Of a DNA stretch of 64,000 nt, positions 42,754 to 44,291 are shown in pieces (the stretch's first letter is position 1; each line of letters begins with the position of its first letter). Position numbers and translations under genes: made by a program. This DNA is from Octopus sinensis (taxonomy: Eukaryota): contig NC_043013.1 of assembly GCF_006345805.1 (NCBI RefSeq), positions 14,818,001 through 14,882,000 of the forward strand, given 5' to 3'. The notes beneath the pieces are model-generated. The model worked only from the letters and a program-made list of their open reading frames with translations. It did no database searches and was not told the origin of the DNA.

Positions 42754-42922
42754 GTATCCTTTTTTTGTTTTTGTAAATTCCATCCTGAAATTTTACCTCA
42801 TCACATCTTACATCTTTTGAGAGGCTGTTGTTGATGCTGTTGTGTGTATGTTTCCCATATAAGACCATTTCTTCAATGACTGTTTATCAGAGATATTCTG
42901 CTATTCAAACTGACTGTTCCTG

Positions 42923-43105
42923 ATAGATCCTTTCTCACCACTTTGTCCCACATCTTCCTGAGTCTACCCCTTCCACGTGTTCCCTCTGCAATTAGAGATC
43001 AGCACCTCTTGATGCAATTGTCTTCATTCATACACATTACATGGCCATACCAGCACTGTCTTCTCTCTTGTACACTACATCTGAGGCTACGTATACCCAG
43101 TTTTT
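42923..43105 (-). mobile_element. RTE LINE ORF2 C-terminal fragment inside the U12 intron
   Basis: Near-identical to 15523-15710 (gatcctttctcaccactttgtccca...ggccataccag...cttctctcttg). Confidence 0.8.
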
Positions 43106-43107
43106 CT

Positions 43108-43460
43108 CTTGGATGCGTGGCAAGAAGTTTGCTTCCAAACCATGTGGCATCTTGGGCAAATGTCTTCTACTCTAGGCACAGACCAAACAAAACCTTGTAT
43201 GTGGGTTTGGTTGACAGAAACTGAAACAAGTTCATCATAGTACTGTTAACCAGACGTCATGTGATAGTTGTATATGAGCATCACCATCTTATACATGAGG
43301 TTGTTTTTTCTGTAAAAAAAAAAACAGAAAAATTTATCAAACTATGGGAAAACATTACCTTGCTCGGAGATAGGTGGGGATTGGCCACAGGAAGGGCATC
43401 TGACCATAGAAAATCTGCCTCAACAAATTTTGTCTGACCCATGCAAAAAGAAAAGTGAAC
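43108..43460 (+). mobile_element. Composite SINE (family B head plus RTE-like tail; family D)
   Basis: B-type head (gtggcaagaagtttgcttcc...ttgggcaaatgtcttct) joined to ...aggaagggcatc...gacccatgcaa. Related pieces at 2355-3035, 31330-31580, 32965-33210. Confidence 0.65.
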
Positions 43461-43847
43461 ATAGTGATTAACAGTGACTGTTTAATTGGAAATTTTGCTG
43501 TTAATATTGGCTTCTCAGAATTGTTTTTAAAAGCCAGTTTTAATGGTGAAATTTGAAAGTCAGCAGTCATACCATCCTTTCTTCCTTTTCAGTTGAGGTA
43601 CCCCTGTATCTCCTCTACAGCCTACAGCAAGACACCTGATCCCATCCCTCCCTCCTACTTTAGCCTCTCTACCCCTGGTACAAAACCACCTTCCTCAATA
43701 CTGCATCACCATTCTGTGAAGGAGTCTTGTCTTGCATGTTATTTTGTGACCCCTTTAGTGTTAGCGCAATGAAAAATGCACCCAGTACATTCATTGGCAT
43801 TAGGGAGGGTATCCTGCCATAGAAACCTCCCCAATGTGCACACAGGA

Positions 43848-43924
43848 GATCCTGTCCAATTAAGGTAATTGGATCTTGTCCAATTAAGGTAATTGGATCC
43901 TGTCCAATTAAGGTAATTGGATCC
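43848..43924. repeat. 24-bp tandem repeat, about 3 copies, hit by a SINE A insertion
   Basis: gatcctgtccaattaaggtaattg. Confidence 0.9.
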
Positions 43925-44157
43925 GAAGGCAGCAAGCTGGCAGAAACGTTAGCACGCCGGGCGAAATGCGTAGCCGTATTTCATCTGCCGTTACGTTCTG
44001 AGTTCAAATTCCGCCGAGGCCAACTTTGCCTTTCATCCTTTCGGAGTCGATAAATTAAGTACCAGTTACACACTGGGGTTGATGTAATTGACTTAATCCA
44101 TTCGTCTGTCCTTGTTTGTCCCCTCTGTGTTTAGCCCCTTGTGGGTAGTAAAGAAAT
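43925..44157 (+). mobile_element. tRNA-derived SINE family A, young copy with 14-bp target-site duplication
   Basis: gcaagctggcagaaacgttagcacgccgg...gagttcaaattccgccgagg...ctttcatcctttcgg...gtgggtagtaaagaaat. Flanked by AGGTAATTGGATCC at 43911-43924 and 44158-44171. Confidence 0.92.
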
Positions 44158-44291
44158 AGGTAATTGGATCCTGTCAAAACCATATAATCCATGCTGTCAT
44201 GGAACACCGACATTAAACGATGATGATGATGGATGTGTATCTGTATGTTTCTTTCTTGCTTTTTGTATTGCTTTTCCTTAACCACTGCCAG

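What the first reader, a model, noticed from the sequence alone, without database searches (positions are those of the whole stretch)
42754..44291. Minor-spliceosome (U12) intron near the 3' end of the DmX-like gene, carrying several TE insertions
SEEN: the donor T|GTATCCTTTT and branch TTCCTTAAC about 10 nt upstream of CCAG|G match the U12 consensus exactly. All other introns here have U2-type donors. The intron splits the Cys codon in GEIC. It has absorbed an RTE fragment, a composite SINE, a 24-bp repeat and a young SINE A while both U12 signals stayed intact. KNOWN: U12 introns are rare, often ancient, and can be rate-limiting for expression. INFERENCE: full-length Rabconnectin-3a output may depend on the minor spliceosome, and retention would remove the last WD40 blades.
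Basis: partly seen in the sequence, partly recalled or inferred. Interest (0 to 1): 0.7.

Follow-up and report, generated by a model that had tools for sequence, protein, structure and literature searches.

The report
Ancient U12 intron in DmX-like gene
The second-to-last intron of this mollusc's DmX-like (Rabconnectin-3 alpha) gene is a genuine minor-spliceosome (U12-type) intron, kept at the same spot in snail, clam and spider, so it is a well-supported but ordinary member of a known intron class.

Summary
Window 42754-44291 (+) is an intron that splits a Cys codon (T|GT, phase 1). It lies between two coding exons of the 3' end of a DmX-like (DMXL/Rabconnectin-3 alpha) gene. Its donor GTATCCTTT and branch site TTCCTTAAC (branch A 10 nt from the CAG acceptor) match the U12 consensus at every position. 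Identical 12-mers in curated human and mouse minor introns score 96-97.5 out of 100. The nine other introns of the gene in this window have U2-type donors.

The decisive evidence is comparative. An intron at the same position and phase, with GTATCCTT and TCCTT[A/C]A[C/T] 10-13 nt from the 3' end, is present in four other genomes:
- a close unlabelled relative
- the snail Candidula
- the ark clam Tegillarca
- the spider Araneus

These introns share no other sequence. The intron therefore predates the split of molluscs and arthropods.

It is absent from bird DMXL1, mammal- and fish-like DMXL2, a stick insect, mite-like sequences and some bivalve-like contigs. One chelicerate-like contig carries a U2-type intron at the same site.

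About half of the octopus-type intron is demonstrably repeat DNA. The "RTE" label could not be verified.

Dependence on the minor spliceosome follows logically. A rate-limiting or regulatory role is untested.

The parts
42664..42753 (+). Coding exon 9 of the in-window model (xFTCHEHGSPAIVYAPQHQLIISGGRKGEI + first base of Cys)
   Evidence: It is conserved in L003, Candidula, Tegillarca and Araneus.
42754..44291 (+). U12-type GT-AG intron, 1538 nt, phase 1
42754..42762 (+). U12 5' splice site GTATCCTTT. It matches the U12 consensus at 9 of 9 positions and the U1 consensus at 3 of 9.
   Evidence: The identical 12-mer TTTGTATCCTTT scores 96.1/96.8 in the MIDB tables.
42774..42776 (+). In-frame TAA reached if the intron is retained (GEICILFLFL*)
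42924..43108 (-). Interspersed-repeat fragment. In antisense it encodes a ...WYGHVM.MNED... peptide, which resembles the tail of a non-LTR retrotransposon ORF2. RTE identity is not verified.
   Evidence: The other copy is at 15521-15706 (87.6% identity).
43143..43239 (+). Head of an older SINE-like element ('B'). It is collinear with the copy at 2419-2882.
43773..43834 (+). Middle piece of the same older element
43848..43924 (+). 24-bp tandem repeat, 3.2 copies, 96% matches
43925..44159 (+). SINE ('A') inserted into the 24-bp array. It is flanked by a perfect 12-bp target-site duplication, gtaattggatcc, at 43913-43924 and 44160-44171.
   Evidence: direct reading. One search shows more than 25 copies in the window, the best at 90-91.5% identity. 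ARAGORN found no tRNA-like head.
44165..44248 (+). Tail of the older SINE-like element 'B', ending in (GAT)n. About 12 copies are in the window.
44274..44282 (+). U12 branch-point sequence TTCCTTAAC. The branch A is 44281 (or 44280), 10 (or 11) nt from the intron end.
   Evidence: The identical 12-mer TTTTCCTTAACC scores 97.5 in the MIDB tables.
44290..44291 (+). 3' splice site AG (CCAG|G)
44292..44419 (+). Coding exon 10 ((C)LFDMRQRLMRHTFQAHESPIKSLALDPEERFFVTGSAEGDIK). It holds the best WD40 repeat and has a U2-type donor, GTATGA.
45331..45540 (+). Last coding exon, with stop TGA at 45538-45540

Best explanation
Window 42754-44291 is a U12-type (minor-spliceosome) GT-AG intron of a DmX-like/Rabconnectin-3 alpha gene, and it is the second-to-last intron.

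Mechanism, inferred from the established biology of U12 introns:
- U11 snRNP pairs with the donor GTATCCTTT.
- U12 snRNP pairs with TTCCTTAAC, bulging an adenosine 10-11 nt upstream of CAG|G.
- Excision joins T to GT and restores the Cys codon of GEIC-LFD.

The intron was inherited from at least the common ancestor of molluscs and arthropods. Selection has held only the roughly 8-nt donor and roughly 8-nt branch motifs. The interior has turned over completely and, in this lineage, has filled with SINE and retroelement fragments.

The donor is a very poor U1 site, so full-length protein should require the minor spliceosome. Failure to splice gives a stop codon after 7 intron-encoded codons. That means a protein lacking the last 112 residues, or an NMD substrate.
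For: Shown by sequence:
- The donor matches the U12 consensus at 9 of 9 positions but the U1 consensus at only 3 of 9. A TCCTTAAC motif lies 10 nt from the 3' end. None of the nine neighbouring introns has either feature.
- Identical 12-mers in curated human/mouse minor introns score 96.1-96.8 for the 5' splice site and 97.5 for the branch site. The classification thresholds are 50 and 65.
- An 11-exon model using exactly these junctions gives one open frame of 441 aa running to the stop codon.

Shown by comparison. The same position and phase, with GTATCCTT and a branch motif close to the 3' end, is found in:
- L003: branch site TCCTTAAT, 13 nt from the 3' end
- Candidula unifasciata: TCCTTCAC, 11 nt
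- Tegillarca granosa: TCCTTAAC, 12 nt
- Araneus ventricosus: TCCTTAAT, 10 nt

Intron lengths range from 331 to 3072 nt, and no pair of introns shares any blastn similarity. Between the window and L003, exon third positions are only 53% identical, yet both motifs are intact.

Gene identity rests on named DmX-like hits and Rav1p_C gene models upstream in orthologous loci.

The consequence of retention is shown. Molluscs, including Octopus sinensis, are reported to have substantial minor-intron complements (PMC10639083).
Against: - No RNA evidence from this species was available: no junction reads, no lariat data, no dependence on the minor spliceosome.
- The branch-to-3' distance of 10 nt is at the short edge of the reported 11-13 nt optimum, although Araneus has the same spacing.
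- The organism of the window and of L003 is not identified by any tool result.
- The 'rate-limiting' idea has no support here beyond general literature.
Confidence: 0.93

Rival explanations
1. The intron has U12-like motifs but is in fact removed by the major (U2-type) spliceosome at the same GT-AG boundaries.
For: The termini are GT-AG and there is a pyrimidine-rich stretch upstream of the branch motif. A homologous intron in L010 is clearly U2-type, so the position tolerates major splicing. The literature reports some sites used by both spliceosomes (abstract of PMC10853781).
Against: The donor matches the U1 consensus at only 3 of 9 positions and lacks G at -1 and +5. The exact U12 donor and branch motifs have been preserved in five lineages while everything else in the intron changed. 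That pattern is unexpected unless the motifs are the functional signals.
Confidence: 0.04
2. This is a recent, lineage-specific (cephalopod) gain of a U12 intron, for example by an insertion with target-site duplication into coding sequence TGT ATC TT that already resembled a U12 donor.
For: Many homologous exons are contiguous across the site. Intronless species read TGT ATC TTC there, which resembles GTATCCTT.
Against: The same U12 intron is present in a gastropod, a bivalve and a spider. In Candidula the downstream exon starts GCATATTT, so the supposed duplicated motif is not conserved. Minor-intron gain is considered very rare (PMC10639083).
Confidence: 0.01
3. The locus is a decaying pseudogene or an assembly artefact, and the gap between the two exons is not a spliced intron.
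For: The intron is repeat-rich, and no transcript from this species was seen.
Against: Eleven exons give an uninterrupted 441-aa frame with canonical splice sites and 73-75% identity to the closest mollusc-type homologues. The closest relative, L003, is 69 of 72 residues identical over exons C and D, with saturated synonymous sites (third positions 53% identical). That indicates purifying selection.
Confidence: 0.02

Closest known systems
U12-type (minor-spliceosome) introns, GT-AG subtype, as catalogued in U12DB / MIDB / IAOD
   Same: The 5' splice site is |GTATCCTTT. The branch site TTCCTTAAC lies 10-13 nt from the 3' splice site, with no polypyrimidine tract between the branch site and AG. 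The phase is non-zero. Position and type are deeply conserved, the interior evolves freely, and the intron has been lost or converted to U2-type in several lineages.
   Different: Nothing mechanistic differs. The host gene is not a minor-intron gene in human or mouse: DMXL1 and DMXL2 are absent from the 2019 MIDB lists, and vertebrate DMXL1/2 exons are contiguous at the site. It therefore belongs to the set of ancestral minor introns kept in some protostomes but not in vertebrates.
DMXL1/DMXL2 (Rabconnectin-3 alpha; Drosophila Rbcn-3A; yeast Rav1) gene family
   Same: The C-terminal WD40 region is 52-60% identical to vertebrate and arthropod DmX-like proteins and 73-75% identical to mollusc-type sequences. 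The outer exon boundaries (xFTCH... and ...IK|V) are the same as in vertebrates, insects and bivalves.
   Different: In this lineage the exon that is single in vertebrates, insects and some bivalves is split by the U12 intron. The Rav1p_C domain itself lies upstream of the part of the gene examined in the window.
U12-to-U2 intron conversion and U12 intron loss (the known evolutionary fates of minor introns)
   Same: The same site shows all three states across taxa:
- U12-type in five genomes.
- U2-type (G|GTATGTAC ... polypyrimidine-cag) in L010.
- Precise loss in vertebrates, Timema, mite-like and several bivalve-like contigs.
   Different: The taxon of L010 is not labelled, so the direction and lineage of the switch are inferred, not shown.

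Membership tests
U12-type intron (GT-AG subtype) | 5' splice site matching |RTATCCTT(T) | tested here: met
   GTATCCTTT matches at 9 of 9 positions. The identical -3..+9 12-mer scores 96.1/96.8 on the minor GT-AG PWM in MIDB tables, against a threshold of 50.
U12-type intron (GT-AG subtype) | Branch-point sequence TCCTTRAY | tested here: met
   TTCCTTAAC lies at 44274-44282. The identical 12-mer TTTTCCTTAACC scores 97.5, against a threshold of 65.
U12-type intron (GT-AG subtype) | Branch site close to the 3' splice site (about 10-15 nt, optimum 11-13) with no intervening polypyrimidine tract | tested here: met
   The distance is 10 nt from the second A (11 from the first) in the window, and 10-13 nt in the four orthologous introns. 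The optimum is quoted.
U12-type intron (GT-AG subtype) | Poor fit to the U2-type (U1-complementary) donor relative to neighbouring introns | tested here: met
   The donor matches the U1 consensus at 3 of 9 positions, against 5-8 of 9 for the other nine introns. A formal major-PWM score was not computed.
U12-type intron (GT-AG subtype) | Orthologous introns at the same position are also U12-type | tested here: met
   L003, Candidula, Tegillarca and Araneus all carry GTATCCTT plus TCCTT[A/C]A[C/T].
U12-type intron (GT-AG subtype) | Excision depends on U11/U12/U4atac/U6atac snRNPs, with a lariat at the branch-site adenosine | not testable with these tools
   No RNA data or experiments were available.
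DmX-like / Rabconnectin-3 alpha gene | Sequence homology of the C-terminal WD40 region to named DMXL proteins | tested here: met
   Hits are named DmX-like protein 2 (Timema, Tenebrio, Xenotaenia, Araneus), DMXL2-like (Mya), dmX-like 1 (Danio) and dmX-like 2 (S. purpuratus), with E-values from 1e-102 to 1e-66.
DmX-like / Rabconnectin-3 alpha gene | Rav1p_C domain (PF12234) upstream of the C-terminal WD40 repeats | not tested
   It was not searched for in the window. The 441 aa modelled were scanned only in part, and that part gave WD40 hits only. In the orthologous Candidula and Tegillarca loci, the gene model immediately upstream carries PF12234.
SINE (element 'A', 43925-44159) | Short, high-copy, non-coding, flanked by a target-site duplication | tested here: met
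   The element is 235 bp with a perfect 12-bp target-site duplication. More than 25 copies are in the 64-kb window.
SINE (element 'A', 43925-44159) | Pol III-type (tRNA/5S/7SL-derived) head | tested here: inconclusive
   ARAGORN found no tRNA-like structure. Rfam gave no tRNA, 5S or 7SL hit. Diverged heads are often missed by these tools.
RTE non-LTR retrotransposon (fragment 42924-43108) | Homology to RTE-clade ORF2 (endonuclease/RT) sequence | tested here: inconclusive
   Pfam gave no significant hit for the antisense peptides. The only evidence is a repeat copy at 15521-15706 and a WYGHVM..NED..GRGRPRKTW motif, which I recognise from memory as the tail of a non-LTR ORF2.

The most novel reading that the evidence does not exclude
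In this lineage the repeat-bloated U12 intron might act as a regulated 'detained' intron. Minor-spliceosome activity would then set the dose of full-length Rabconnectin-3 alpha, a V-ATPase assembly factor important for synaptic-vesicle acidification, in neurons. Retention would route the transcript to NMD or to a truncated protein lacking the last WD40 blades. A lesser point: the site offers a natural series (U12 kept, U12 converted to U2, intron lost) for studying the fates of minor introns.
Probability: 0.1. Interest if true: 0.5.

Novelty: new member of a known kind. Interest (0 to 1): 0.25.

Why it matters
The practical value is for annotation.
- U12 introns are not modelled by many gene predictors. 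The Tegillarca gene model skips the exon before this intron and invents a cryptic acceptor. The Amblyomma model stops short of it.
- Recognising the intron gives the correct C-terminus of a large, neuronally important V-ATPase regulator.

In evolutionary terms it adds one clear case of an ancestral protostome minor intron.
- It has been held for more than half a billion years in molluscs and a spider (my dating of the mollusc-arthropod split, from general knowledge).
- It has been lost in vertebrates and insects.
- It has been converted to U2-type in one lineage.

It does not open a new question. Whether minor splicing limits expression of the gene remains an untested general hypothesis.

Tried and rejected
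1. Cephalopod-specific gain. The first homologue search returned only exons contiguous across the site. Intronless species read TGT ATC TTC there, so I considered a recent gain by insertion with target-site duplication. I rejected this once labelled genomes (Candidula, Tegillarca, Araneus) showed the same U12 intron. The Candidula downstream exon also starts GCATATTT.

2. PDB sequence search to name the gene. It gave only generic WD40 hits and no DMXL chain.

3. Pfam on the C-terminal 259 aa and on upstream exons. It returned WD40 or beta-propeller families for the first and nothing for the second.

4. Literature searches for DMXL1/2 together with U12 or minor intron. Nothing relevant was found. 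The supplements of the pan-eukaryotic survey held no gene list, and one paper had no supplements held.

5. Look-up of the Mya arenaria gene model. It is not on record.

6. Pfam on the antisense peptides of the putative RTE fragment. There was no significant hit.

7. ARAGORN and Rfam on the intron. No tRNA was found, and only sub-threshold miRNA matches appeared.

8. An unfiltered tblastn of all ORF pieces against L003 was swamped by microsatellite-derived low-complexity matches. I repeated it with filtering.

9. I ran no further search on dating the intron in deuterostome invertebrates or cnidarians. Most hits are unlabelled and only two contig look-ups remained.

Full report
**Observation**

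- The upstream exon ends ...GGA GAA ATT T at 42753.
- The intron begins GTATCCTTT at 42754.
- TTCCTTAAC lies at 44274-44282.
- The intron ends CCAG at 44291.
- The next exon begins GT TTA TTC GAT ATG AGA.

Joining 42753 to 44292 gives ...GEIC LFDMRQR..., so the intron splits the Cys codon after its first base (phase 1).

GTATCCTTT and TTCCTTAAC each occur exactly once in the 64-kb window on either strand. A single occurrence of either is close to the chance expectation of about 0.6-0.7. What is not chance is their placement. Both lie on the coding strand, at the two ends of the only gap that the protein alignment allows. From base composition I estimate the joint probability for a fixed donor and about 14 permitted branch positions at roughly 3e-8.

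**The gene**

- Comparing the window's open frames with a related contig (L003) showed five conserved plus-strand exons ending in a stop codon.
- A search with the concatenated exons returned named proteins: DmX-like protein 2 (Timema, Tenebrio, Xenotaenia, Araneus), DMXL2-like (Mya arenaria), dmX-like protein 1 (Danio) and dmX-like protein 2 (sea urchin).
- In the Candidula and Tegillarca genomes, the gene model immediately upstream of the homologous region carries the Rav1p_C domain.
- Using transcript-derived homologues as guides, I built an 11-exon model of the 3' part of the gene. It gives one uninterrupted frame of 441 aa ending at TGA 45538-45540.
- The intron in question is the ninth of ten in the window, which makes it the second-to-last intron of the gene.
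- The other nine donors are GTAAGT, GTCAGT, GTAAGA or GTATGA. They match the U1 consensus at 5-8 of 9 positions, and none has a TCCTTRAY motif in its last 40 nt.
- Intron 9 matches the U1 consensus at 3 of 9 positions and the U12 donor at 9 of 9.

**Scoring against curated minor introns**

I could not run intronIC. The supplementary tables of the MIDB paper (PMC6717393) list the -3..+9 donor and 12-nt branch-site strings of human and mouse minor introns with their PWM scores.
- The window's donor 12-mer TTTGTATCCTTT occurs there with scores 96.1 (mouse Ralgapa1) and 96.8 (human SLC9A9).
- Its branch-site 12-mer TTTTCCTTAACC occurs with score 97.5 (Rasgrp1, AP1M2).
- The paper's criteria require a minor 5' splice site score above 50 and a branch-site score above 65. 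It quotes an optimal branch-to-3' distance of 11-13 nt.
- Here the distance is 10 nt from the second A and 11 from the first.

**Comparative evidence**

This is the decisive part. The first homologue search suggested the opposite of conservation. Nine ORF calls on genomic contigs ran straight across the site, with the same outer exon boundaries. Labelled genomes then changed the picture. An intron at exactly the same nucleotide position and phase is present in four other sequences:

| Source | Donor | Branch site | Distance to 3' end | Intron length |
|---|---|---|---|---|
| L003 (closest relative, unlabelled ENA assembly) | T\|GTATCCTTA | TCCTTAAT | 13 nt | 2799 nt |
| Candidula unifasciata (gastropod) | T\|GTATCCTTG | TCCTTCAC | 11 nt | 1636 nt |
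| Tegillarca granosa (bivalve) | T\|GTATCCTTT | TCCTTAAC | 12 nt | 331 nt |
| Araneus ventricosus (spider) | T\|GTATCCTTT | TCCTTAAT | 10 nt | 3072 nt |

- No pair of these five introns shares any blastn-detectable similarity.
- Between the window and L003, the flanking exons are 80.7% identical in nucleotides, with third positions only 53% identical.
- Only the two U12 motifs have been held constant, which is the signature of selection on functional U12 signals.
- The intron therefore dates at least to the common ancestor of molluscs and arthropods.
- My interim idea of a cephalopod-specific gain through target-site duplication is rejected.

**Where the intron is missing or changed**

The exon is contiguous in:
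- bird DMXL1 (Chauna, L008) and the stick insect Timema (L009)
- genomic ORFs that match Myotis DMXL2 and carp DMXL2
- mite-like sequences
- L001, whose exon is 69/72 identical to Mya arenaria
- contigs about 93% identical to the Tegillarca exon (67 of 72 residues, by my own count; the scripted comparison was misaligned)
- L005

DMXL1 and DMXL2 are also absent from the human/mouse minor-intron gene lists. Positive controls were found in those lists, and the alphabetical run reads DIAPH3, DMC1, DNA2.

One chelicerate-like contig (L010) carries an intron at the same position and phase, but with a U2-type donor (G|GTATGTAC), a polypyrimidine tract before cag| and no TCCTTAAC. I read this as a U12-to-U2 conversion. 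Loss and conversion are the known fates of minor introns, and gain is considered very rare (PMC10639083).

**Repeat content**

Self-comparison and TRF show the following.
- A 185-bp repeat fragment lies at 42924-43108. One other copy is at 15521-15706 (87.6% identity). Its antisense translation carries a WYGHVM..NED..GRGRPRKTW-type motif, which I recognise from memory as the tail of a non-LTR ORF2. Pfam gives no hit, so 'RTE' is unverified.
- An older SINE-like element has its head (43143-43239), middle (43773-43834) and (GAT)n tail (44165-44248) collinear with a 464-bp copy at 2419-2882. Here they are spread over 1.1 kb by later insertions.
- A 24-bp tandem array of 3.2 copies lies at 43848-43924.
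- A 235-bp SINE lies at 43925-44159. It inserted into that array with a perfect 12-bp target-site duplication (gtaattggatcc). More than 25 copies are in the window, and the closest are 90-91.5% identical.
- About 740 of the 1538 nt are demonstrably repeat-derived.
- The last repeat ends 25 nt upstream of the branch site, and the first begins 170 nt after the donor. Both signals escaped disruption.

**Function**

Shown:
- If the intron is retained, the frame reads GEICILFLFL and stops at 42774-42776. This removes the 112 residues of exons 10-11, including the best-scoring WD40 repeat.
- That stop lies far more than 50 nt upstream of the last exon junction, which is the NMD criterion quoted in PMC6717393.

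Inferred:
- The donor is a very poor U1 site, so the minor spliceosome is the only efficient route to full-length protein.

Not shown:
- Nothing here shows that this step is slow, rate-limiting or regulated.

**Verdict**

This is a real, textbook U12-type intron, deeply conserved in protostomes, in a gene that has no minor intron in vertebrates. I class it as a new member of a known kind; automated intron databases may already list it, which I could not check. Interest is modest. It mainly matters for correct annotation and as a clean example of the retention, conversion and loss of a minor intron.

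Noticed in passing
L010 1738-2424 (Logan SRR30952540): A chelicerate-like DMXL contig has an intron at exactly the same position and phase, but of U2 type. The donor is G|GTATGTAC, a polypyrimidine tract precedes cag|CA, and there is no TCCTTAAC. This looks like a U12-to-U2 conversion. The split codon is GCA (Ala) instead of Cys.
   Followed up: yes
L006 19585-19837 (Tegillarca granosa); L010 1502-1737: In these two genomes the exons corresponding to window exons 8 and 9 are fused, so the upstream U2-type intron has been lost. 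The intron at the U12 site was kept. It is still U12-type in Tegillarca and is U2-type in L010.
   Followed up: partly
P0042 / L006 (Tegillarca), P0077 (Amblyomma americanum): Deposited gene models break at this intron. The Tegillarca model skips the exon before it and starts the next exon at a cryptic 'YTG' acceptor. The Amblyomma model ends in intron read-through just before the site. In both Candidula and Tegillarca the DMXL gene is split into two models. This is typical of predictors that do not model U12 sites.
   Followed up: partly
window 43490-43553 (+): A near-perfect 60-nt hairpin lies inside the intron (MFE -23 kcal/mol, z = -3.95, and none of 200 shuffles folds as well). Rfam gives only sub-threshold miRNA matches (mir-2_2 at 24.9 bits against a gathering score of 94). 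No other copy is in the window. It could be a transposon inverted repeat or a miRNA-like hairpin.
   Followed up: partly
window, e.g. 11348-11582, 17365-17541, 22391-22623, 60684-60912 and more than 20 others: The 235-bp SINE of the intron is very abundant, with more than 25 full or partial copies in 64 kb on both strands. Part of another copy (44447-44490) lies in the next intron.
   Followed up: partly
window 4526-20470 and 20555-30490: Two very long introns (15.9 kb and 9.9 kb) separate short exons of 84-169 nt. The last 441 codons of the gene span about 42 kb, and the sequence is dense in SINEs and TG/TA microsatellites.
   Followed up: no
window 27921-28193 (+): There is a tandem repeat whose translation reads LTMVTCTIKPFQ about five times (a roughly 39-bp unit), inside the 9.9-kb intron.
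   Followed up: no
window about 62400-63930 and 45580-45620: There are long TA/TG/CA microsatellite-like tracts, which translate as YIYIYI/CMYVCM. They swamp unfiltered protein-level comparisons. One sits just after the stop codon in the presumed 3' UTR.
   Followed up: no
L003 319-2348: In the relative's locus, ORF calls with rve, SH3_retrovirus and RVT_2 Pfam hits indicate remnants of an LTR retrotransposon in an upstream intron.
   Followed up: no
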